Below, in pieces: positions 7,811-49,590 of a stretch of DNA of 64,000 nucleotides. The stretch spans positions 1 through 64,000 of the IMG/VR virus record IMGVR_UViG_3300030339_000003; one strand, given 5' to 3'. The notes beneath the pieces were generated by a model. It made no database searches and was not told where the DNA came from. It was given only the letters and a program-made list of their open reading frames with translations. Each line of letters begins with the position of its first letter. Positions within the stretch are counted from its first letter, which is position 1. A program made the translations under genes and the position numbers.

Positions 7811-7862
7811 ACTAGAGTAAATTAAGATGGGATTAATCTACTCTAGTAATGTAGGGTTGAGA
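7811..7862 (-). promoter_or_regulatory. phiKZ-type early promoter plus 5' hairpin
   Basis: TCAACCC-TACATTAC (core 7846-7853); 15-bp stem at 7811-7847. Confidence 0.7.
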
Positions 7863-19691: not shown

Positions 19692-19735
19692 TTAAATAGA
19701 GTGGTTAACTACTTAAGTAATATAGGTTTAAAAAT
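19692..19735 (-). promoter_or_regulatory. phiKZ-type early promoter plus 5' hairpin
   Basis: TTTTTAAACC-TATATTAC (core 19717-19724) followed by the stem TTAAGTAG/CTATTTAA. Confidence 0.75.
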
Positions 19736-25126: not shown

Positions 25127-25972
25127 TTACATCCAGGCAGTCAGTTCAGCAGTCGCCGCAGGAATAGCTGACACTTCGGCATCAGCAATATCTACGTTAC
25201 CATTGTTTGACCAGCTTTTGTAGAACGCCGCACCCTGAGTTGCACCGACACCAACGCCCATACCCAGGGCAGAAGCAACCACGTTAGCGATCAACGGGTT
25301 CAGTGTTTTCAGGAACGCAACTTTGTCGAACAGGTAATCGGTACCGAAGTACGCCACAGCGACGCCACCAATACCAGCGCCTACAGTTTCATACGATACA
25401 CCCGCAGATGTATAGATAGAAATACCGGCACCCAGCGCAGCAGAAACAGATGCGATAACTTTAGGTTGCAGCCAGTTGTTTTCTTCACCAGTGAAGGTTT
25501 CAGTTGGAGCTTCTACATTGGAGATTGCGTGTTTGCTACTGTTGAGGCCCAGCGCGTTCAGCAGACGGATTTCTGCTTCGGTACGTGAGGTGCCAGCTTT
25601 CAGATCTTTTTCGTATTGGGAAAATTGTGTATTCAGCATATCGACGCTCTGCATTTCTTCAGGAGTTAAGACTTCGCCATTGGCGATGCGATTATTAATT
25701 GAAGCTTGACCGGAACGAAGCGCTTTAACTTGCGCCGATGATGTTGACGTTGCTTCTTTGGCATAAAGTGCTTTCAGCGCTTTAACTGTATATTTGGTGC
25801 CCAACGCCGAATTGATTTTGTTGATGAATTCGCCATGGTGCTGAGTTTCAACATCTTCGACTAATGATGTTGCGACACTGGTATCAATAGATGCGTCGTC
25901 GATATTTTCAGCGCGCATACGAGTTACTACTGCAACAGTTTCGTTGATGATCAGTTCGAGTGGAGTTGTCAT
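25127..25972 (-). CDS. Early membrane protein with three Gly/Ala-rich hydrophobic helices
   Basis: Own early promoter and terminator; VSAALGAGISIY, VGAGIGGVAVAYF, ALGMGVGVGA. Confidence 0.75.
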   Translation of the reverse strand: MTTPLELIINETVAVVTRMRAENIDDASIDTSVATSLVEDVETQHHGEFINKINSALGTKYTVKALKALYAKEATSTSSAQVKALRSGQASINNRIANGEVLTPEEMQSVDMLNTQFSQYEKDLKAGTSRTEAEIRLLNALGLNSSKHAISNVEAPTETFTGEENNWLQPKVIASVSAALGAGISIYTSAGVSYETVGAGIGGVAVAYFGTDYLFDKVAFLKTLNPLIANVVASALGMGVGVGATQGAAFYKSWSNNGNVDIADAEVSAIPAATAELTAWM

Positions 25973-26006: not shown

Positions 26007-26063
26007 GATAAATAAAGATAAATACTGCATCTTTATACACCTAAGTAATGTAGATCTGAAAAT
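26007..26063 (-). promoter_or_regulatory. phiKZ-type early promoter plus 5' hairpin
   Basis: TTTTCAGATC-TACATTAC (core 26045-26052), then GGTG-T-ATAAAGAT/ATCTTTAT-T-TATC. Confidence 0.7.
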
Positions 26064-26101: not shown

Positions 26102-26133
26102 TATTATCCCTATCCTCACGGATAGGGATAATA
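26102..26133. terminator. Hairpin terminator
   Basis: TATTATCCCTATCC-TCAC-GGATAGGGATAATA. Confidence 0.8.
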
Positions 26134-26145
26134 GTAAGTTAAAAT

Positions 26146-26724
26146 TTAAAGATCTATGTCGACAATCAAAGCCATAACCCTTTTGGGAGACAACGGCCCA
26201 TATTTGTTATCCCGGTCACCCAAATAATAAACCGCTTCTGTTTGACGCAACCAATTACTATCAAATTTCTCAATAGTGATTCGCAAGTTGTGAAGTTTAG
26301 ATGTTTTAGCAATACTTAAATGTGCGTGATTATTTTTATCGATATATTTAAATGAACCATCTTCAAAACATGTTTCATGATAGATCATGGCACCGGGTGT
26401 AGTTGGGTGCTCGTCATCATGATAAACTGAAAGATACTGTTGACCGCCAATGCCGCGTAACAAATGATTAAGATTATCTTTTAGATTATTGTCGGCTTTA
26501 AGCATATCAGGAATAGCTAAAGCATCTAATTCTAAATGATTTAAGAAATGCTCTAATAGTGTGCTGAGTAACCCATTCCTTAATCCAGTTTCAATAAAGA
26601 TTCTTGAAGCGGGATGCTCTTGCAGGTAAATATAAGCTTTATCATCGTCAGCCGAAATAATGTATTGACGACCATTAACTTTTGCATTCCAAAGACCTGC
26701 GCTATTGAATTTTAATTCAATCAT
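26146..26724 (-). CDS. Hypothetical protein
   Basis: 192-aa ORF. Confidence 0.7.
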   Translation of the reverse strand: MIELKFNSAGLWNAKVNGRQYIISADDDKAYIYLQEHPASRIFIETGLRNGLLSTLLEHFLNHLELDALAIPDMLKADNNLKDNLNHLLRGIGGQQYLSVYHDDEHPTTPGAMIYHETCFEDGSFKYIDKNNHAHLSIAKTSKLHNLRITIEKFDSNWLRQTEAVYYLGDRDNKYGPLSPKRVMALIVDIDL

Positions 26725-26728
26725 TGTG

Positions 26729-27442
26729 TTAACCTTTAATTAATTGTTGGAAACGTGTTGAGATAATTGCATAATACAAATAAGGTGGGACGTTCTCATA
26801 AGCGCCTAATGAGAAACCTTCATTAACTTCTACCAACCCCCACTGACCGTTGATTAATCCCATATCAAAACTTCCTACGGTATAACCCCTTACCCGTAAT
26901 AACGTCATGATATCTTTAATAATAGGAATTAATTCTTTTGATCCATCAGAACAATAAAACGTATCGTTTTTGTAATACACTCGGCACTCGTCGGTAATGC
27001 TAGCTACGGCAGCAGAATAGATTTCAACCTTTGGACTAAATGCATCAAAGTAAAGGTTAGAAGTCGAATGCGCAATGTAACCGGTAAACAGTTTTAACAC
27101 TTTCACTGGCTTAATAAAACGAGGCAAAGTGGATTCGTCTAACTTACCCATCGTTGTTTTAATGATATCGCGGTGTAAATATTGCTTGAGGTAATCGGGA
27201 TAGTCGTTAGGGATAGGTAAATCTTTCTTATACTTTCTTAACGTGTGTTTAACAAAGTCAATATCGCCTGCCGCAAAAGCTAATTTATCAGGCAAAGACT
27301 TCCGAATGATTTCTTTACTCCCCACTAATTCAACAATAAGTTTTAATTCAGCAACATGAGCTTGGATATAATCCTTTAGTATTTGTTCTTCTTTATCTAA
27401 CTTACCTGTACCATGTTGTTCTAACCAAACCATTTTCCACAT
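26729..27442 (-). CDS. ATP-grasp domain protein (DUF4343/R2K-like)
   Basis: DYP..L..YLHR, FIKP...KLFTG, ECRVY, FDMG..W.LVEVNEGFSLGAY. Confidence 0.8.
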   Translation of the reverse strand: MWKMVWLEQHGTGKLDKEEQILKDYIQAHVAELKLIVELVGSKEIIRKSLPDKLAFAAGDIDFVKHTLRKYKKDLPIPNDYPDYLKQYLHRDIIKTTMGKLDESTLPRFIKPVKVLKLFTGYIAHSTSNLYFDAFSPKVEIYSAAVASITDECRVYYKNDTFYCSDGSKELIPIIKDIMTLLRVRGYTVGSFDMGLINGQWGLVEVNEGFSLGAYENVPPYLYYAIISTRFQQLIKG

Positions 27443-27452
27443 ACATAACTCC

Positions 27453-27479
27453 TTACCTTACCCACTTAGGGTAAGGTAA
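27453..27479. other. Intergenic hairpin abutting the SD of the ATP-grasp gene
   Basis: TTACCTTACCC-ACTTA-GGGTAAGGTAA; no U tract. Confidence 0.6.
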
Positions 27480-27484
27480 TATGT

Positions 27485-27916
27485 TTATTCGCAATCACGA
27501 ACGTGTTCGTAAGTAAAGATGACTTCTTTACCAAGCCAATTAGCCAACTCAGTATTAATCTTAATTAAATCAAAACGAGTAGGGTCGTACACCAAAGACA
27601 TGTGCAATAACAACGTAGAATAAGAATGAGTATAACCTGCGTCTGTTAAGCGTCTGAATTCCTGTTGTAAGCCCACGCTATGCAGTTCTGCTACAATTGC
27701 ATCGCCCAGTTCTTTAAACCCAATGATGGTGGCTTTAAAGAGCACGTGCGAGTTAATATCACAACGTGGTTCATCACATTCTGATTTATCATACATCAGC
27801 GTAATATGAAACGGATAAGTGGTAGCGGGCTGTATGCTCAGATCGGTTAATGCTGTTTTTAATTGCTTTTCGGTTTCTTCAAGTAGGTTAACCGATATGT
27901 ACCCCAGCTTTGGCAT
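27485..27916 (-). CDS. 2H phosphodiesterase, anti-CBASS Acb1 (T4 gp57B)-like
   Basis: Two Hx[T/S] motifs, FHITLMY and LHMSL; 143 aa. Confidence 0.7.
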   Translation of the reverse strand: MPKLGYISVNLLEETEKQLKTALTDLSIQPATTYPFHITLMYDKSECDEPRCDINSHVLFKATIIGFKELGDAIVAELHSVGLQQEFRRLTDAGYTHSYSTLLLHMSLVYDPTRFDLIKINTELANWLGKEVIFTYEHVRDCE

Positions 27917-28463
27917 GTTGGTTCCTCAAATGTTTAATGGTCTTATACATAACATTTTGATTACGCTTTTGCTTACGGTACTTTGAACTTACCTTTAAAT
28001 ACTTACGCAATCCAACAGGTAACACCAGGCCATGTTTCTTTAACACATAGTCAATAAAGATGGATCTTGACGGAGCATTATTAAAGTAACCTGTTAAACT
28101 TAAATAAGAATTAAAAGGATTACCCGAATAAAAGGTGGGCTCTTCATCAGCCACTTTATTAACTTTCAGTTCCTCAACATCAAATGCAGTAATGCCGTCG
28201 GGGAAATAAGCATCGTGTATGTAACCATCGTCAGTAATATACACGTGGAAAGGACCCACATTAATCGTGGGCGTTAATCCATAGCCAATCGCAATACGTT
28301 CTACTAATAAAGCCATGACATGACAATCCCCACTGTTAATGATTCCAGGGATTGAAAGTTTCGACTTATTACCCTCAGCGATATACAATAATTCAAATTC
28401 TTGAATTAAGCTATCAATGATCGATTTGTATAACTTTCTTTTAGGGCTCATATCCTGCGTCAA
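27888..28463 (-). CDS. Transglutaminase/papain-like Cys-His-Asp protein
   Basis: INSGDC..MA, FHVYI, IHDAYFPDG. Confidence 0.5.
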   Translation of the reverse strand: MTQDMSPKRKLYKSIIDSLIQEFELLYIAEGNKSKLSIPGIINSGDCHVMALLVERIAIGYGLTPTINVGPFHVYITDDGYIHDAYFPDGITAFDVEELKVNKVADEEPTFYSGNPFNSYLSLTGYFNNAPSRSIFIDYVLKKHGLVLPVGLRKYLKVSSKYRKQKRNQNVMYKTIKHLRNQHAKAGVHIG

Positions 28464-28947
28464 TCTCCGTTACACCAACACTTGCCGCTTTAGCAAGAAC
28501 GTCAACCATTTCATTATACTTATCGCCTGTGTGTGCTTTGACTTTGTGGAAATAGATTTTGTTTTCCTTAATCAAAGGATAAGCACGTTGCCACAAGTCC
28601 AAGTTCTTGATAGGTTTCTCTGCACCTGTTTCCCAATCAACACGTACCCAATTCTTACGCTTCCATCCATGAATCCATTTCATCAATCCATCTTTGGCGT
28701 AATTGGAATCAATATAGATGTCAAAGGTTTTGTTAGGACCAAATTCCTCTAAAGCTTTAATAACAGCTAAAAGCTCCATACGGTTATTGGTTGTCTTAAT
28801 AAACCCACCGCTTAATTTAAGTTCGGTGTTTTCATCGATAGGGATAACACAGCCCCAACCACCAGGCCCAGGATTAGGTGAAGCACTACCATCGGTATAA
28901 ACTACGATAGACTTATCTTTAGCAGGCTCTTCATATTTAGCCGTCAT
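28441..28947 (-). CDS. rnhA: Ribonuclease HI
   Basis: YTDGS..NPGPGGWG, TTNNRMEL, DS.Y, KN.DLW, VKAH..NE.VD. Confidence 0.97.
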   Translation of the reverse strand: MTAKYEEPAKDKSIVVYTDGSASPNPGPGGWGCVIPIDENTELKLSGGFIKTTNNRMELLAVIKALEEFGPNKTFDIYIDSNYAKDGLMKWIHGWKRKNWVRVDWETGAEKPIKNLDLWQRAYPLIKENKIYFHKVKAHTGDKYNEMVDVLAKAASVGVTEIDAGYEP

Positions 28948-28962
28948 AACGATCCTTATAGT

Positions 28963-28984
28963 TTAGGGGGCTTTCACCCCCTAA
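28963..28984 (-). terminator. Hairpin with GAAA loop
   Basis: UUAGGGGGU-GAAA-GCCCCCUAA. Confidence 0.65.
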
Positions 28985-28993
28985 GTTTATTGA

Positions 28994-42585: not shown

Positions 42586-45500
42586 CTAGAGATTGGAACC
42601 CGTCGGTAAATCTGATTGATAGATGTAATCCAATACACCTGCATCCATTGGTAGACCGATAGACACTGGGACTGAACCCGCAATACGTGCTGTAGACAAT
42701 ATTGCGTCACCAATCATAAACGTTGATTTCCGATTGATTAACAGAATTTGCAAAGCATTGGTAATAACTTCAGCAGCAGGAATTAAAGACAGATTATGTC
42801 TGATCTTTTTACCCGATACAATAAAGTAAGCTTTGTCACCGTAACACGTTGCATAAACATAAAACGTTTTGTTACCCGGGGATGGATCGATATCACGTAA
42901 ATCAACTGTGCCTGTTGGGGCGTCGTATTGAGTTCCGTTGATAACTAACTTAGTCCCTGCTTTGAAATAGATAATCCAACCTGAGTCAGGATAGCAACTG
43001 GATAACAAATAAGGGCCATCAGTTGTGTTAGCGATACAACATGCTTGTCCTGTATAGGTTTGGTCGTACAAAGCAGCAAAACCTACTTTAGGAATCATTG
43101 CAATAGAACCACTTGGTGTATAGCTTCCTGAGGTAACCACACTACGGGTAAACTTATTCGTACTCAGATTATAATCGTAATCCGGATAGAATGCCGTACT
43201 ACCACCTGAAACTTTACCCAGTAAACCAGAACTTCCTTTTACAGTAATAACGTTTCCATTTTTGTAACTTTGGAAATGTCCTGTTGTCCCACCTACTTGA
43301 ACATAGAAACTAGGACTTGCTGTGTCCCCGCCACCCATTGTTAAAATAGTAGAAGCATCAAGGAAAACTGGAGCAGTGATTGGGTATACACCATTGACAG
43401 GCGCGCCTACAGTAAAGTTAATTGCCAACACTTGAAGACGGATAGTTGACGGGCTGCTCGGCGAGTACCAATGAACATTAACAAACATTGGTTGGTTAGC
43501 TGATAGCCCGGCGTTGGAGATATCCCGCTGAGGAATACTAACACGTAATCCCATAACAGTAGCGGTAGATCCATCTGACTGCACCATAGACTTGATTTGG
43601 TTCAGTACGCTTGCCGTCATACCGTAATAATTATTAGCGACAACATTTAACGTCATGTCATCATCTTTAAATGTTTTAGTCACTGACCGTGGGCAAACAT
43701 AATAATTATCCAAAACGGTAGCCATATTACCGACTTGACGTGAAACATTATTCCATGCACCATTAACCAACAACAGTCCCATTCCTGACAATGTTGTTAC
43801 GCCCATCTCGACACCAGCTGCTGCTAATTCGGCTGCTGTTCCGCTATATGCGTTAAACAATTGCCCGTTATGAAGGTTACTACGATAAACGGTATTTACT
43901 AAAGGGCGCGCTTTCATATTACTAAGTTTAATGTTAGTAATGCCCGCTCTCAAAGCAAAAGCACCGGTTACTTTGCGGAAACCCATAATGGAGTTTTGTG
44001 CATTAATGTCTAACCCAGGAATCCATTCTCCATCGATATCATTGGCTGGAACGTTAGAACCTCCACCAATTTGTAAAGGCGCTGGAGTTTTAATTGCGAT
44101 GTTAAATGAAGTCCAATTATTCGCCGCAAGTGTTGCATTAGCTGTTGATTTTAACAAAGCGTCAGCTGCAGTGGTATTACCGCCTTTAAGCCCTATGAAC
44201 CCGGTAGGCACATAAACGTGGTCACCGTTATCACGAAGTACCAACAAGTCACCAGTACGCGTTACAATCCCGCCATAAGGTCCCCAGTTATATCCCGCCA
44301 CGTTAGCCGCAAAATCGCTCAATACAAATTTACTTGAACCCGACAAACCATCATTCGCATTTAACGCATTAATGGGTTGTTGCGCCGCAATAGTAATTGC
44401 CCCACTGATACAATTTATACGAATAGTCATTTCAAAACTGACGTATTGGAACCAGTTCAAATCAGCATTACGATACAAAGGACGATGCACAACTTTCATC
44501 AACATGACGTCAGGTGATTCTTCGGCAAAGAAAATAGCCGCATTATAACGTCTAACAATGTCGGTTGCATAAGGTGTGATTGTATTAATAAAACGAGTAA
44601 TGTGACCTTGCGCATCTGTTACCGTAGCATCAGGAATCCAATATGCCGAATTAGTATATTGATTACCTGTCAGATCTTTAAAGGTCACCGGCACCGCTGT
44701 AAAAGTCACAACAGTTTTAGTCGTCAAATCACTGACTAATGCGCGATAGAAATAAACTTTAAGATCGTCTGGCTGGCTTACAATGTAAATGTAAGTTTTT
44801 GTCTTAAAGCAATGACAAAACGTTGGGTCGGTTAAAGAAGCGCCAGGGATATTACTTAAATCAAATTCTTTATAGTTGTGTGTGTCAGGATTTAACGTGC
44901 CGTTAGTTAAAGCACCAAACCATTTCCCTTTAACTGAGTCACCCGCAACCATAACCCCAGGGCCTGAGCCTAACATAACTGTATCTAAAGCATATCCCTG
45001 AGCTGTTAAAGCAGCGTTGGCATATTTAAACCCGGTAAAATAATAAGGTTTAGTCGCGTCTTTATAATCGTCAATAAAACTAAAGTACAAACCTTTTACA
45101 CGACCGTCATAATGACGTTTAACGGAAACCAAACGACCATTGTTTTCAAGACACATAGCAGCGCAGTTGTTGTCAGTCCCTAAACCTTCAAAAGAGCCAT
45201 CGATGACAGGTGGCAAATAATCATCAGCTGTTAAAGAAGAAATTGGTAGTAGACCGTTATTTAATAAACCTGATGTATCAGGAACAGCTGCTTTAATGGC
45301 TGCTAATGCACCGGCGCTGGTAGAAAACAAATTAGTTGTTGTACCTAGAACATCTTGCGCTACAGTAGCAGTAGCAAAGTTATCGATGTTTTGTAATAAC
45401 AACATGGCTGCTGTAACTTTGTGGGGGTTACCACTATTCCGACCATGATTAATTAAATTGGTATTAACTAGATTATATTTAGCAATCAAGTTTTTAAGTG

Positions 45501-46065
45501 TTGTATCAACCAACGCAAAGATTTGAGTAATAGTTTGGCTTTTACTTACTTTGTTCTGATAAACACCTACCAGGTATTTAACGTACAGAACCAGTTCAGA
45601 CCAATCCATTAATTCTTCTTTTGAATGCCAGTGATAAGAAGATGGCAACGTTGGAGGAATTTGAATTACCTTAGACCATGGGATAGGTTCAGACCCATGC
45701 GAAATAGCATCGAGTTGGTCTTCCAAGCTACTACGCGGAATAAAGGAAGCGCCGACTGAATGATAGCTAATGGTCAACTCGTCGTAAGACTGTAATAAAA
45801 CGTCATCCAATTCGATAAACGTATTAATGTCCAATCCGGTCATTTCAATTAATGGCATGGGTTTAAAGACTTCTTTCCAACCCGTTTTAATTGATTGCCC
45901 ACTGGCGTCTTTGATCTTAACTGAACCTGCTTTAAAGGGCGCGCCGTTAGGAACAATCCAAGGACACTGTTTATCGCTCAGTTTTTGTACTTCGTCTTTA
46001 ATGTCGTTAACGGGGTTAGTCCCTGCCGGATCAAACTGCAAAGCCGGCCACATTTCAATTAACAT
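42586..46065 (-). CDS. Tail fibre protein (phiKZ gp145/146-like)
   Basis: NPHKVTA..L.NIDNFATA, PPVIDGSFEGLG, DLR.I..SPGNKTFYVY. Confidence 0.75.
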   Translation of the reverse strand: MLIEMWPALQFDPAGTNPVNDIKDEVQKLSDKQCPWIVPNGAPFKAGSVKIKDASGQSIKTGWKEVFKPMPLIEMTGLDINTFIELDDVLLQSYDELTISYHSVGASFIPRSSLEDQLDAISHGSEPIPWSKVIQIPPTLPSSYHWHSKEELMDWSELVLYVKYLVGVYQNKVSKSQTITQIFALVDTTLKNLIAKYNLVNTNLINHGRNSGNPHKVTAAMLLLQNIDNFATATVAQDVLGTTTNLFSTSAGALAAIKAAVPDTSGLLNNGLLPISSLTADDYLPPVIDGSFEGLGTDNNCAAMCLENNGRLVSVKRHYDGRVKGLYFSFIDDYKDATKPYYFTGFKYANAALTAQGYALDTVMLGSGPGVMVAGDSVKGKWFGALTNGTLNPDTHNYKEFDLSNIPGASLTDPTFCHCFKTKTYIYIVSQPDDLKVYFYRALVSDLTTKTVVTFTAVPVTFKDLTGNQYTNSAYWIPDATVTDAQGHITRFINTITPYATDIVRRYNAAIFFAEESPDVMLMKVVHRPLYRNADLNWFQYVSFEMTIRINCISGAITIAAQQPINALNANDGLSGSSKFVLSDFAANVAGYNWGPYGGIVTRTGDLLVLRDNGDHVYVPTGFIGLKGGNTTAADALLKSTANATLAANNWTSFNIAIKTPAPLQIGGGSNVPANDIDGEWIPGLDINAQNSIMGFRKVTGAFALRAGITNIKLSNMKARPLVNTVYRSNLHNGQLFNAYSGTAAELAAAGVEMGVTTLSGMGLLLVNGAWNNVSRQVGNMATVLDNYYVCPRSVTKTFKDDDMTLNVVANNYYGMTASVLNQIKSMVQSDGSTATVMGLRVSIPQRDISNAGLSANQPMFVNVHWYSPSSPSTIRLQVLAINFTVGAPVNGVYPITAPVFLDASTILTMGGGDTASPSFYVQVGGTTGHFQSYKNGNVITVKGSSGLLGKVSGGSTAFYPDYDYNLSTNKFTRSVVTSGSYTPSGSIAMIPKVGFAALYDQTYTGQACCIANTTDGPYLLSSCYPDSGWIIYFKAGTKLVINGTQYDAPTGTVDLRDIDPSPGNKTFYVYATCYGDKAYFIVSGKKIRHNLSLIPAAEVITNALQILLINRKSTFMIGDAILSTARIAGSVPVSIGLPMDAGVLDYIYQSDLPTGSNL

Positions 46066-46107: not shown

Positions 46108-49100
46108 TTAGCTTTGTATAATTTCAGATGGATATGCCCAATGCATTACACCGGTTTCATCAATGTTACCCGTGACCGCAGGAATAGCTCCACCACGTTT
46201 TGTTTCTGATACACGTTTGCCGTTTAACAAAAGAACATTTGAACGGGCAATGTTTAATATTTGGTTAGCATTCGTTGTCACTGTCCCAATCCAAATATTA
46301 AATGAAGTATCATAACGTTTTGATTCTGAGATTTCGTAACCCGCTATACCGTCTGTTACTGACGCGTAAATATAGAAAGTCGAATTACCCGGGTTTGCCT
46401 TAACTGTACGCAAATCAATAACACCCGCTGGAATGGTGTAAGTCTTACCATTGAACATTGGATACGTTGTTGATTGGAAGAACACAGACCAAGCCGGGTC
46501 AGGATAACAAGAGCTTAACCCAACTGCCTGAGAGCCCACTTTAACTAAGTTAGCGGCACCACCTGAATATTGCTGGTCATACTTCAACCCTTTACCCACT
46601 TTAGGTACGTACGATATATTGTTAACACCTAAAATATTTTGCATATAAACAGAAGTACGTTTAATCAGTTTATCACTAATGCCTACATCCCAATCAGAAC
46701 CACAATGAGAAGCATTGCCAGTGTATGAGGTACGTAAATAACTGTTAAACGCGATAGACATCAAAGATCCGTTAAAATAGATATTTGATACGTTTTCAAC
46801 CAAATTATTTATAGCATAAGTGAAAGGATAAGCAGTGGCAGTCAGTGCGTTTTGACGAGTCATATCGTTGATGTCACTTTTCGATATAACGGTATATCCT
46901 GTTACTGTGCGGTCATTACCACTCGTACTGTAAGTAACAGACAACACGCCCAATGCCGTACGACGTGTACGGTTTGCAACATCACCATAAGACACTTGAA
47001 CCAATACAGGTTTAGACGTGATCGCTGCATTAGGAACAAATGTTAAATCAATAATGATCGCTGCATAGTTTGGTGTATTTTGATATTGCGCTGGAATTAA
47101 TTCTGCTGCAATCGCGTCGACAATTGCTTTCGGGTAAGTAATATAACCCGACGGGGTAATGTTTAATACGTTATTTGACCCATTTGATAACGTAACACCA
47201 ATCGGCATTAAAATGGATTCATCTTTAACCGGAACACGCCATCCCGGATTACCTCCGGCATAATACTTGCCTTGTAGCCCAATAGACCACACTGTCAATC
47301 CTAAACCAGTAATCCCGAAAGCACTAATTGCCGCGGCATCGCCTGTCAAGTTAACGCGTGGAGTCAATGGAGAAATATTTGTTTTACGCACATTATTAGA
47401 CAAAGGTCGTGATAATACCGATGCAAAATTAATGTTCTTAAAACTATCCCTTACCGCATAATCACCTGTTACGTCACGATGGAATACACCTAATGCTGAA
47501 TTAGACGACTGTCCAATTGCATTATAAAACTCACCTGAAATATCGTACGATACAGATGAGCTAAAAGTTGAACTCAATATTGGTGATACAATAACTTCAA
47601 CACTTGATTTGTAATTGAAGTTAGGGTAATTCACTTTATTAAAGTTCTTAGCAATTGCATCGTAAGGTGATGTAGCGCCGGTAGTAATCAACTGAACGTA
47701 ATGTGGTGTGTTGGTATTGTTAACTGTAGCTGTTATCAGCATATTGCCGTCAGGCATTAAAGACCAACCGTTCTCATTACGTGCGCCGTTAGACCAAGGT
47801 AAGTTAGCCCCACCATTCGGACGATTATAATACGCATTTAACACTGCACCGGGATTAGCAGAACTACTAGGATCAATAGTTGGGGGTTCCAAGTAATCAA
47901 CCATAGTCATAATGCCTGTTGCAGGGTCAAACTTATAATTATTTTCAGGTGTAAATGCAAATGATGAGTTGTCAGTGTCGTTCACAATGTTGACGTTAAG
48001 AAACCCAAATATTTTAATCAACCATGTGTTTGTATCGCCTTCTGTTTTGGTACAAAAGTTAAGCATTGCACGATAAAACGTTTGCATCGTTAACGTGTTA
48101 ACGAGCGGTGGATTAAATTTAACATATGAACTTAAATAATTACCGTTTGCATCAGTTTTATTTTTAGCCCAAAGGAACGTATCACTGTTTGTAAAGGAAT
48201 CTCCGTCCGCATTGGTATAAGTCAGGTTCATTCGTGTAGGAATAACTTTCGCACCTGTTACTAATGCCGAAGTTGGCATGCGATAAAATGCACGCGCATT
48301 AACACCTGTATTATCTGCTGCAAAAGCCTGGATAATAACAACGTAAGCTCCCATTAAGTGAATGCTCATTACTTGGCCAGTTAAATTGGCTTGAATTAAT
48401 GCACTTAAATCAACTTCCACCACGGTGTGGTAGGCTGGGTTCAACGTTCCGTTAGTAAATACAACGAACCATCTGGAACCCGACCCAATGAGCATAATGT
48501 CTCGCCCTTCGGATTGAGCAATTGTATCAACCACTACACCTGCTGCGGTTAATACTGGGTGCGTGTAACGATAAGACTGATAATTAACCGTTAGTGTGTT
48601 GGGGTAACCTGTGATGATCGAGAAAAACAAACCTGATGTTTGTCCGTCAAAATGGTTACTCAACATACTGATCGTGCCGTCTGTTTCGGTACAAAAAACC
48701 GCACACTCAGATAATGAACCCAGCCCTTCAAATGAACCACCAATAGTTGGTGGAATAAATGAAGTGTTACCGTAAAAGGATATTGGCAATACGTCGGCTT
48801 TAAGATAAGCATCACCATTGAATCCGTAACGCTCAATCAGTTTGTCTAATCCGTTTGGCGTAAGGCGTTGGTTAGGAACACCCCGTAATACTTCAGCAAT
48901 GGAGGACGTTGGGATGTTATCAACTAAACCTTTACCGATTTGTGCTTTAGTTAATCCATGCGCATCAATAGCTGTTTTATGGCGCGCTAAAGCATAATCA
49001 ATGAAAGCACCATTACGTTCAAAATACTTACGGACTAATGCAGTTTGTGTTTCAACTGCTATGCGTCCATAGTTCTGTTCGGTTTGTTGCAACATGGATG

Positions 49101-49590
49101 ACCATTCATTAATCATGTCTACGACATCACCAAAAGTCGTGATTTCGTAAGTCAATGAATGTGTGTGCCAAATCGGATCAAACACAACGGGCTTGTTTTT
49201 AATATTGGACCATTTAATTAAACGCTGATCATTTGCTGCGTTATTAATCAGTTCAATAAAGGAAGCATCAAACAAAGTAGAAGAACCTGTTTGATGATAA
49301 TCCATAACGACTTGTTTAATATCAGGGTTGGTCATTTCAATTAAACAAGCGACAGGTGCAGCGCACAATGCAGATAACGACCCCATCATGCGATAAATAC
49401 GATAATCGTTTTTGGTTAACAGATTACCATCAAGATCATAGACCTTAAGAGACTCTACGAAAAAAGGCGCATAACGAGGTACGAATACGTTTTGGTTATC
49501 GTCTAATACGTATGACTCGTCATAGACTTTGTTTTCGGTAAACTCTTGATACAGATCAAGTTTAAAACCAGGAATGATGGGATAGTTCAT
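46108..49590 (-). CDS. Tail fibre protein (paralog of 42586)
   Basis: DAHGLTKAQIG..VDN, PPTIGGSFEGLG, DLR.V..NPGNSTFYIY. Confidence 0.75.
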   Translation of the reverse strand: MNYPIIPGFKLDLYQEFTENKVYDESYVLDDNQNVFVPRYAPFFVESLKVYDLDGNLLTKNDYRIYRMMGSLSALCAAPVACLIEMTNPDIKQVVMDYHQTGSSTLFDASFIELINNAANDQRLIKWSNIKNKPVVFDPIWHTHSLTYEITTFGDVVDMINEWSSMLQQTEQNYGRIAVETQTALVRKYFERNGAFIDYALARHKTAIDAHGLTKAQIGKGLVDNIPTSSIAEVLRGVPNQRLTPNGLDKLIERYGFNGDAYLKADVLPISFYGNTSFIPPTIGGSFEGLGSLSECAVFCTETDGTISMLSNHFDGQTSGLFFSIITGYPNTLTVNYQSYRYTHPVLTAAGVVVDTIAQSEGRDIMLIGSGSRWFVVFTNGTLNPAYHTVVEVDLSALIQANLTGQVMSIHLMGAYVVIIQAFAADNTGVNARAFYRMPTSALVTGAKVIPTRMNLTYTNADGDSFTNSDTFLWAKNKTDANGNYLSSYVKFNPPLVNTLTMQTFYRAMLNFCTKTEGDTNTWLIKIFGFLNVNIVNDTDNSSFAFTPENNYKFDPATGIMTMVDYLEPPTIDPSSSANPGAVLNAYYNRPNGGANLPWSNGARNENGWSLMPDGNMLITATVNNTNTPHYVQLITTGATSPYDAIAKNFNKVNYPNFNYKSSVEVIVSPILSSTFSSSVSYDISGEFYNAIGQSSNSALGVFHRDVTGDYAVRDSFKNINFASVLSRPLSNNVRKTNISPLTPRVNLTGDAAAISAFGITGLGLTVWSIGLQGKYYAGGNPGWRVPVKDESILMPIGVTLSNGSNNVLNITPSGYITYPKAIVDAIAAELIPAQYQNTPNYAAIIIDLTFVPNAAITSKPVLVQVSYGDVANRTRRTALGVLSVTYSTSGNDRTVTGYTVISKSDINDMTRQNALTATAYPFTYAINNLVENVSNIYFNGSLMSIAFNSYLRTSYTGNASHCGSDWDVGISDKLIKRTSVYMQNILGVNNISYVPKVGKGLKYDQQYSGGAANLVKVGSQAVGLSSCYPDPAWSVFFQSTTYPMFNGKTYTIPAGVIDLRTVKANPGNSTFYIYASVTDGIAGYEISESKRYDTSFNIWIGTVTTNANQILNIARSNVLLLNGKRVSETKRGGAIPAVTGNIDETGVMHWAYPSEIIQS

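What the first reader, a model, noticed from the sequence alone, without database searches (positions are those of the whole stretch)
26146..28463. ATP-grasp ligase, Cys-His-Asp peptidase-like protein and Acb1-like nuclease: candidate counter-defence or peptide-tagging module
Seen: contiguous co-oriented genes downstream of rnhA encoding a transglutaminase/papain-like triad protein, a 2H phosphodiesterase, an R2K-type ATP-grasp and an unknown protein, closed by one terminator. An internal hairpin abuts the ATP-grasp SD. Known: ATP-grasp ligases paired with transglutaminase-like peptidases act as peptide-tag writers and erasers, and R2K ATP-grasps occur in conflict and RNA-repair contexts. Inference: reversible modification of host targets coupled with destruction of immune second messengers.
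Basis: partly seen in the sequence, partly recalled or inferred. Interest (0 to 1): 0.68.

Follow-up and report, generated by a model that had tools for sequence, protein, structure and literature searches.

The report
Jumbo-phage accessory genes, not one module
Four neighbouring genes of an uncultured giant phage are real and probably help it against bacterial immunity, but comparison with other phages shows they are a conserved enzyme pair plus an optional add-on, not the single tag-writing and tag-erasing machine that was proposed.

Summary
On the minus strand, downstream of RNase H, lie four genes:
- a 187-aa protein with an invariant Asn-Cys-His-Asp set and a confident transglutaminase-like model
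- an Acb1-family 2H phosphodiesterase with both His-x-Thr/Ser motifs
- an R2K.2 ATP-grasp with intact Arg/Lys/Lys and ExN residues
- a fast-evolving orphan of 192 aa

Strong hairpins follow Acb1, abutting the ATP-grasp ribosome-binding site, and follow the last gene.

The one-module reading is not supported. The four genes occur together only in this phage's own clade (a peat-derived, phiKZ-like, 231-kb genome). Within that clade the ATP-grasp is absent, split or reordered, and the orphan moves.

In 34 other jumbo-phage loci the ATP-grasp has no Cys-His-Asp protein, no Acb1 and no conserved neighbour. The conserved unit is RNase H, then the Cys-His-Asp enzyme, then Acb1, with overlapping reading frames.

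Most likely these are independently acting accessory or counter-defence enzymes. Acb1 would degrade cyclic-oligonucleotide immune signals. The ATP-grasp and the orphan form an optional, hairpin-bounded cassette.

One new lead emerged. The Cys-His-Asp family has no Pfam model. In 4 of about 14 contexts it directly overlaps a nucleotide phosphohydrolase gene, from four different superfamilies (2H, cREC, HD, NUDIX).

The parts
28441..28947 (-). RNase H gene (168 aa). It is the first gene of the conserved core. Its stop overlaps the next gene's start by 11 nt.
   Evidence: PF00075 at E 1.9e-40 and phrog_531. It lies directly upstream of the Cys-His-Asp gene in every clade relative whose contig reaches that far.
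27888..28451 (-). Cys-His-Asp protein (187 aa from the ATG at 28451). It has a transglutaminase-like fold and a basic C-terminal helix. It belongs to a family with no Pfam model.
27485..27916 (-). Acb1-family 2H phosphodiesterase (143 aa). Its start overlaps the Cys-His-Asp gene by 29 nt.
   Evidence: PF23474 at 8.4e-11, above the cut-off. HxT and HxS motifs are conserved. The best solved-structure matches of the family profile are Acb1 entries 9q2g (1.5e-4) and 7t26 (7.6e-4), with both motifs aligned.
27453..27479 (-). Perfect 11-bp hairpin after the Acb1 stop. It abuts the ATP-grasp Shine-Dalgarno sequence and marks the end of the conserved core.
   Evidence: Folding energy -20 kcal/mol, z = -4.0. 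A hairpin with a different sequence sits at the same place in six relatives, including those that lack the ATP-grasp.
26729..27442 (-). R2K.2-family ATP-grasp ligase (237 aa). It is the first gene of the optional cassette.
   Evidence: PF18299 at 4e-13, above the cut-off. R91, K111, K117, E152, R154, D193, E205 and N207 are invariant. It is missing, split or reordered in relatives.
26146..26724 (-). Orphan protein (192 aa), fast-evolving and confined to this phage clade.
   Evidence: No family, Atlas or phage-database match. There are 14 family members, all from the clade. 470 nt of the gene are replaced in a near-identical relative. The fold prediction is unusable, pLDDT 51.8.
26102..26133 (-). 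14-bp hairpin after the last stop codon, without a U-tract. It closes the cassette.
   Evidence: Folding energy -22.1 kcal/mol, z = -5.4, with 0 of 200 shuffles as good. Equivalent hairpins precede the g281 homologue in relatives.
26038..26062 (-). phiKZ-type early-promoter motif for the next gene (g281, 25127-25972). It marks the start of a separate transcription unit.
   Evidence: The motif is conserved upstream of g281 homologues in L008, L011, L013 and L018. At least 14 copies occur genome-wide, all on the minus strand. It matches the published consensus for phiKZ, EL, OBP and 201phi2-1 (PMC7058600).

Best explanation
The stretch is an accessory region of an uncultured, peat-derived, phiKZ-like jumbo phage, probably devoted to counter-defence or host takeover. 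It consists of two separable units, not one machine.

Unit 1 is conserved and translationally coupled: RNase H, then the Cys-His-Asp transglutaminase-fold enzyme, then Acb1-type 2H phosphodiesterase. It ends at a hairpin.

Unit 2 is an optional, hairpin-bounded cassette: the R2K.2 ATP-grasp ligase plus a fast-evolving orphan.

Shown here:
- the genes and their catalytic residues
- the fold class of the Cys-His-Asp protein
- family membership of Acb1 and the R2K ATP-grasp
- the pattern of presence and absence in relatives

Inferred:
- The Acb1-like enzyme hydrolyses cyclic oligonucleotide immune signals (CBASS-type) through its two His-x-Thr/Ser motifs.
- The Cys-His-Asp enzyme is an active thiol hydrolase or transferase (protease, isopeptidase or deamidase) acting on an unknown, probably host, protein.
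- The ATP-grasp acts alone as an ATP-dependent carboxylate-amine ligase on an unknown target, as previously predicted for phage R2K enzymes.
For: Genome context:
- The genome is a 231,366-bp viral record with terminal repeats.
- It carries phiKZ-type early promoters.
- The runs that hold it are peat metagenomes.

Families and residues.

Fold of the Cys-His-Asp protein.

Core conservation:
- RNase H, Cys-His-Asp and Acb1 are adjacent in all clade contigs, at 38-49% Cys-His-Asp identity.
- The Cys-His-Asp and Acb1 frames overlap in all but L013, where a 129-aa ORF intervenes.

The cassette is optional:
- L011 and L012 have no ATP-grasp in the 12.5 kb held, and the orphan lies 3.9 kb downstream.
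- L013 has the ATP-grasp but no orphan.
- L017-L019 have the orphan before the ATP-grasp.
- L008 has the ATP-grasp in two frames.

The ATP-grasp stands alone elsewhere:
- 34 loci outside the clade lack Cys-His-Asp, Acb1 and orphan homologues.
- No neighbour family is shared by more than 6 of 38 loci, and those 6 are related phages.

Hairpins bound the two units, and their positions are conserved with changed sequence.

R2K ligases were already noted as sporadic in jumbo phages and predicted to modify host proteins (PMC4431377, PMC7824862).
Against: - No biochemical or expression data exist for any of the four proteins. No RNA run holds the locus.
- 'Counter-defence' is inferred from family membership (Acb1) and from accessory-gene behaviour. 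No PADLOC or defence-related model matches.
- Conserved adjacency within one clade may be plain shared ancestry.
- The ATP-grasp and Cys-His-Asp protein could still cooperate in this clade without being linked elsewhere.
Confidence: 0.6

Rival explanations
1. The ATP-grasp writes a peptide or amino-acid tag on host targets, the Cys-His-Asp enzyme erases it, and Acb1 removes immune messengers. All of this works as one co-regulated module.
Against: The two families are never near each other outside the clade. The ATP-grasp is absent or split in clade relatives that keep Cys-His-Asp and Acb1. In YC1 and AH06 the two families lie 11 kb and 74 kb apart. A conserved hairpin separates the ATP-grasp from the Cys-His-Asp and Acb1 pair.
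Confidence: 0.08
2. The Cys-His-Asp enzyme and its neighbouring nucleotide phosphohydrolase (here Acb1) form a two-enzyme unit that attacks one nucleotide-signalling immune pathway at two points. For example, one removes or cleaves a protein component or conjugate while the other destroys the signal.
For: - Cys-His-Asp and Acb1 frames overlap in 7 of the 8 distinct clade loci held.
- Cys-His-Asp family genes directly overlap genes of three other nucleotide phosphohydrolase superfamilies in unrelated phages. These are cREC_REC (L015, with an AcrVA2-like gene beside it), HD_4 (FBKp24 group) and NUDIX (Aphrodite1 group).
- N, C, H and D are conserved in those members.
- That is 4 of about 14 independent contexts. 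My rough expectation, not measured, is under 1.
Against: Ten other contexts show no recognisable hydrolase neighbour. The baseline frequency was estimated, not measured. Anti-defence genes cluster in islands regardless of pathway. The Aphrodite1 match is weak (E 8e-3).
Confidence: 0.2
3. The 2H enzyme is an RNA end-healing 2',3'-cyclic phosphodiesterase (LigT-like) working in nucleic-acid metabolism alongside RNase H and DNA ligase. On this reading it is not an immune-signal nuclease.
For: PHROGs labels the family 'RNA ligase' (phrog_755, E 1.3e-18). There is a weak LigT_PEase hit (0.18). RNase H and NAD-dependent DNA ligase lie upstream. Jumbo-phage 2H enzymes have been proposed for RNA repair (PMC7824862).
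Against: The Acb1 model scores far better than LigT and passes its cut-off. The nearest solved structures are Acb1. No Rnl2 or RtcB ligase was found in the genome, which is estimated complete. The Rnl1 search was uninformative because its controls did not ring.
Confidence: 0.12

Closest known systems
Acb1 (T4 gp57B / Erwinia phage FBB1 Acb1; Pfam PF23474; PDB 7t26, 9q2g)
   Same: It passes the Pfam model. It has the same size (about 145 aa), both His-x-Thr/Ser motifs and a phage origin. The family is widespread in jumbo phages, with 95 phage records.
   Different: It is detectable in the PDB only with a family profile (E 1.5e-4). Substrate range is untested. Here it is translationally coupled to a Cys-His-Asp enzyme. 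Homologues in two jumbo phages are annotated as virion proteins.
R2K.2 family of ATP-grasp ligases (DUF4343/PF18299; Burroughs, Zhang & Aravind 2015)
   Same: It passes the Pfam model. The Arg plus two Lys and the ExN motif are conserved. It shows the sporadic phage distribution already described for jumbo phages (PMC7824862).
   Different: There is no linkage to R2K.3, GNAT or ADP-ribosylglycohydrolase genes as in the bacterial operons. No family member has a solved structure or a known substrate.
Transglutaminase-like cysteine enzymes (protein glutaminase, LapG/BTLCP, arylamine N-acetyltransferase, vasohibin)
   Same: The Cys is at a helix N-terminus, with His and Asp on the following beta-hairpin. 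These proteins dominate the structural match list.
Phage_YunG-like (PF24591)
   Same: It is the nearest cluster by language-model features (0.89) and is among the nearest Atlas shapes (TM 0.47-0.54).
   Different: The Pfam HMM does not match the protein or anything in the genome. One relative reaches only E 0.055.

Membership tests
Acb1 (PF23474) | Matches the family HMM above the curated cut-off | tested here: met
   42.2 bits against a cut-off of 27, E 8.4e-11, covering residues 6-122.
Acb1 (PF23474) | Two catalytic His-x-Thr/Ser motifs of the 2H superfamily | tested here: met
   H37-I-T39 and H105-M-S107. Both histidines are invariant in 8 homologues and align to the motifs of solved Acb1.
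Acb1 (PF23474) | Hydrolysis of cyclic oligonucleotide immune signals and rescue from CBASS | not testable with these tools
   This needs an enzyme assay and a defence panel.
R2K.2 ATP-grasp (PF18299) | Matches the family HMM above the curated cut-off | tested here: met
   49.9 bits against a cut-off of 26.2. R2K_3 scores lower, at 22.5 bits, below its cut-off.
R2K.2 ATP-grasp (PF18299) | Conserved Arg and two Lys, plus the ExN metal-binding motif | tested here: met
   R91, K111, K117 and E205-V-N207 are invariant across 8 sequences of 25-97% identity.
R2K.2 ATP-grasp (PF18299) | ATP-dependent amide ligation | not testable with these tools
   No family member is characterised, and there is no solved relative by sequence.
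Transglutaminase-like / papain-like cysteine enzyme superfamily | Conserved Cys-His-Asp triad in the canonical order and secondary-structure positions | tested here: met
   C43 is at the N-terminus of helix 43-56. H69 lies just before strand 70-74, and D80 follows strand 77-79. All three are invariant.
Transglutaminase-like / papain-like cysteine enzyme superfamily | Fold match to solved members | tested here: inconclusive
Transglutaminase-like / papain-like cysteine enzyme superfamily | Recognised by a curated sequence model | tested here: not met
   The window protein has no Pfam hit. Only the Miami homologue touches Transglut_core3, at E 0.005, below the cut-off.
Phage_YunG-like (PF24591) | Matches the family HMM | tested here: not met
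   There is no match in the protein or in the six-frame genome, even at E 10.
ATP-grasp ligase / peptidase tag writer-eraser operon | Ligase and peptidase genes stay linked across unrelated genomes | tested here: not met
   None of 34 non-clade ATP-grasp loci has a Cys-His-Asp gene nearby. None of about 13 non-clade Cys-His-Asp contexts has an ATP-grasp nearby.
phiKZ-like jumbo phages (context) | Early-promoter consensus of the TATATTAC type repeated through the genome | tested here: met
   At least 14 copies of TTTCArryCTAyATTACTTAGGTG, all on the minus strand. The consensus is given in PMC7058600.

The most novel reading that the evidence does not exclude
The Cys-His-Asp proteins are a new, jumbo-phage-specific family of transglutaminase-fold enzymes. 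They work as obligate partners of nucleotide phosphohydrolases (2H/Acb1, cREC, HD, NUDIX). This would give phages a two-pronged weapon against nucleotide-signalling immunity: one enzyme acts on a protein component or conjugate of the pathway, and the other destroys the signal.
Probability: 0.18. Interest if true: 0.7.

Novelty: new member of a known kind. Interest (0 to 1): 0.4.

Why it matters
Acb1 and R2K ligases are already known in jumbo phages, so most of the locus is ordinary accessory content. Two things have some value.

First, there is a clean natural experiment. Relatives with and without the ATP-grasp cassette argue against a tempting writer/eraser story.

Second, there is a Cys-His-Asp enzyme family with no Pfam model and no solved relative. 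It occurs in at least 38 cultured jumbo-phage records and repeatedly overlaps nucleotide-hydrolase genes of unrelated folds. If that link is functional, it points to a new class of phage enzymes aimed at nucleotide-signalling immunity (CBASS, Thoeris, alarmone pathways). It is testable in cultured phages such as FBKp24, Moabite and OBP.

Tried and rejected
DNA and word searches:
- A megablast of the locus against 50,697 phage records found nothing.
- The word-index protein search found only near-identical relatives of the Cys-His-Asp protein and the ATP-grasp. I therefore spent the one exhaustive search on the Cys-His-Asp protein.
- tblastn of the Cys-His-Asp protein and the orphan against phages found nothing. 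Distant family members were needed as queries.

Family scans:
- PADLOC and NCBIfam gave no relevant hits.

Structure:
- Foldseek against the PDB gave nothing for the Cys-His-Asp model.
- The orphan's AlphaFold model has pLDDT 51.8 and is unusable, so it was not searched. The Atlas feature search for the orphan had no usable hit.
- Profile searches of the PDB for the ATP-grasp and Cys-His-Asp families found nothing meaningful.

Complex prediction:
- The Cys-His-Asp with Acb1 job returned 'no answer', score 0.00. It is not evidence either way.
I left that protein out and did not send it elsewhere.

Locus searches:
A narrower ATP-grasp alignment worked.

Reads:
- Read laying was given 4,001 letters and contigs only, so it says nothing about transcription.

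Other points:
- No alternative genetic code was used.
- The YunG literature search returned only author names.
Full report
WHAT IS THERE

The window is the first 64 kb of a 231,366-bp viral record with direct terminal repeats, estimated complete. The public runs that hold it are peat metagenomes, and none is on record as RNA.

On the minus strand, ORFs run without a break:
- RNase H, 28441-28947
- a 187-aa protein, 27888-28451
- a 143-aa protein, 27485-27916
- a 237-aa protein, 26729-27442
- a 192-aa protein, 26146-26724

Spacings between them are -11, -29, +42 and +4 nt.

Pfam places the second of the four flagged genes in Acb1 (PF23474, 42 bits, cut-off 27). It places the third in R2K_2 ATP-grasp (PF18299, 49.9 bits, cut-off 26.2). 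The first and last match nothing. PHROGs adds only phrog_6870 (unknown function) for the first and phrog_755 ('RNA ligase') for the 2H protein. PADLOC and NCBIfam are silent.

THE CYS-HIS-ASP PROTEIN

The word-index search found only a 97% relative. I therefore used the exhaustive search, which found 10 representatives among 1.84 billion proteins.

N39, C43, H69 and D80 are invariant in the alignment. They remain so when more distant members from cultured jumbo phages are added.

The AlphaFold model is confident (pLDDT 87.6, pTM 0.86). It puts the Cys at the N-terminus of a helix and the His and Asp on the following beta-hairpin.

Structure searches gave the following:
- Foldseek found nothing in the PDB.
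- The Atlas shape search agrees: Transglut_core2, Phage_YunG-like, Peptidase_C93 and Tox-PL-2, at TM of about 0.45.
- BFVD gives clear matches to uncharacterised proteins of cultured jumbo phages: Moabite, FBKp24, USC-1 and Eowyn, at E 1.8e-6 to 6e-4.

The Pfam YunG-like model does not match the protein or the genome. I do not file it there.

ACB1 AND THE ATP-GRASP

The 2H protein has H37-x-T39 and H105-x-S107, and both histidines are invariant. A profile of the family finds Acb1 structures as the best PDB matches (9q2g at 1.5e-4, 7t26 at 7.6e-4), with both motifs aligned. The family occurs in 95 phage records, mostly jumbo phages.

The genome has no detectable Rnl2 or RtcB ligase. The Rnl1 search was uninformative because its controls did not ring. 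This weakens the RNA-repair reading.

The ATP-grasp keeps R91, K111, K117, E152, R154, D193 and E205-x-N207 across homologues of 25-33% identity. This is the R2K signature described by Burroughs et al. (PMC4431377). The presence of R2K ligases in jumbo phages, and the prediction that they modify host proteins, is already in the literature (PMC7824862).

DO THE GENES BELONG TOGETHER?

(a) Within the clade, contigs encoding Cys-His-Asp relatives of 38-49% identity share the wider gene order: SbcC-like, SLT, ligase, and so on to RNase H. So they are relatives of this phage. All keep RNase H, Cys-His-Asp and Acb1 in order. L013 has a 129-aa ORF between Cys-His-Asp and Acb1. The rest varies:
- L008 has the ATP-grasp in two frames, then the orphan.
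- L011 and L012 have no ATP-grasp in the 12.5 kb held, and the orphan lies 3.9 kb downstream.
- L013 has the ATP-grasp but no orphan.
- L017-L019 have the orphan before the ATP-grasp.

(b) Outside the clade, the ATP-grasp occurs in 5 distinct cultured jumbo phages (6 records) and 29 further IMG/VR loci. None of these has a Cys-His-Asp, Acb1 or orphan homologue within 4-8 kb, even with a broadened Cys-His-Asp profile. Only 1 of the 5 cultured genomes has Acb1 at all, about 66 kb away. Clustering of neighbours finds no family shared by more than 6 of 38 loci, and those 6 are related phages.

(c) In YC1 and AH06, both the ATP-grasp and a Cys-His-Asp-like gene exist, but 11 kb and 74 kb apart.

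The ATP-grasp is therefore a solo, optional gene.

HAIRPINS AND TRANSCRIPTION UNITS

Strong hairpins lie:
- upstream of RNase H (28960-28987)
- after Acb1 (27453-27479; -20 kcal/mol, z = -4.0)
- after the orphan (26102-26133; -22.1 kcal/mol, z = -5.4)

The hairpin after Acb1 is present at the same place, with a different sequence, in six relatives. These include relatives without the ATP-grasp. It therefore belongs to the end of the core unit and is not a device specific to the ATP-grasp, although here and in L008 and L013 its 3' arm runs into the ATP-grasp ribosome-binding site.

Neither hairpin has a canonical U-tract. Calling them terminators is an inference.

Downstream of the last hairpin lies TTTCAGATCTACATTACTTAGGTG. 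This motif is conserved upstream of the next gene in all relatives. It is repeated at least 14 times in the genome, always on the minus strand. It matches the early-promoter consensus of phiKZ, EL, OBP and 201phi2-1 (PMC7058600).

Together with weak tubulin-like and RNA-polymerase-beta-like ORFs, this points to a phiKZ-like phage. The next gene starts a separate early unit.

THE ORPHAN

The family has 14 members, all from the clade. Where a close relative has the Cys-His-Asp protein and ATP-grasp at 97% identity, the orphan's nearest relatives are only 82-86% identical. In a roughly 96%-identical strain, 470 nt of the gene are replaced by unalignable sequence. The fold prediction failed (pLDDT 51.8). 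I can say only that it evolves like a protein under an arms race or frequent exchange.

A LEAD THAT GOES BEYOND THE FINDING

Using distant family members as queries, Cys-His-Asp-like genes turn up in 38 cultured jumbo-phage records.

In four independent settings the gene directly overlaps a nucleotide phosphohydrolase gene, each time of a different superfamily:
- Acb1/2H, in this clade
- cREC_REC, in L015, next to an AcrVA2-like gene
- HD_4, as in SpoT-type hydrolases, in the FBKp24 group with a 32-nt overlap
- NUDIX, in Aphrodite1 with a 4-nt overlap, although the match is weak at E 8e-3

The N, C, H and D residues are conserved in those members.

Ten other contexts show no recognisable hydrolase.

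Four of about 14 is more than the under-1 I would expect if such genes make up 1-2% of a jumbo-phage genome. That baseline is my estimate and was not measured. Anti-defence genes also cluster for other reasons.

A complex prediction for the Cys-His-Asp protein with Acb1 returned no answer.

VERDICT

The Acb1 inference is supported by homology. The writer/eraser module is not supported.

The most likely picture is a conserved pair, Cys-His-Asp enzyme and Acb1, downstream of RNase H, plus an optional ATP-grasp and orphan cassette. Each acts on its own target in host takeover or counter-defence.

The families are known or belong to known superfamilies, so novelty is modest. The hydrolase adjacency of the Cys-His-Asp family is the part worth a follow-up.

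Noticed in passing
window 26038-26062 (-), also about 19716-19731 (-) and 7845-7860 (-); genome-wide in G000: A phiKZ-type early-promoter motif (TTTCArryCTAyATTACTTAGGTG) occurs at least 14 times in the 231-kb genome, always on the minus strand. It matches the published consensus of phiKZ, EL, OBP and 201phi2-1.
   Followed up: partly
window 26146-26618: The orphan gene is hypervariable. In a roughly 96%-identical relative, 470 nt are replaced by 475 unalignable letters, while the flanking genes stay near-identical.
   Followed up: partly
L008:7020-7746: The ATP-grasp homologue of a clade relative is split over two reading frames (113 + 130 aa). This is either a real frameshift or an assembly error.
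   Followed up: no
L015:93-2197; L055:2825-3989; L056:3091-4634: Cys-His-Asp-family genes overlap cREC_REC, HD_4 and NUDIX hydrolase genes in unrelated phages. In L015 an AcrVA2-like gene lies just upstream.
   Followed up: partly
window 42586-46065 and 46108-49590 (-): Two tandem paralogous genes of 1159 and 1160 aa both match phrog_3573 and virion or tail-protein families.
   Followed up: no
window 25127-25972 (-): The next gene (281 aa, Gly/Ala-rich hydrophobic C-terminal half) has its own early promoter. It is conserved next to this locus in all relatives. It has no family assignment.
   Followed up: no
G000:C1:135746-136183 (-) and 111616-111726 (-): There are sub-threshold matches to tubulin (344-aa ORF, just downstream of an early promoter) and to RNA polymerase beta (711-aa ORF). 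These are consistent with a nucleus-forming phiKZ-like phage.
   Followed up: no
L013:2705-3094: A 129-aa ORF with no family match is inserted between the Cys-His-Asp gene and Acb1 in one relative. It is the only case where the pair is not overlapping.
   Followed up: no
phage records MF459646.1 (RisingSun) and KU574722.1 (CBB): Homologues of the Acb1-like protein are annotated as virion structural proteins in two cultured jumbo phages. This hints that the enzyme may be packaged and injected.
   Followed up: no
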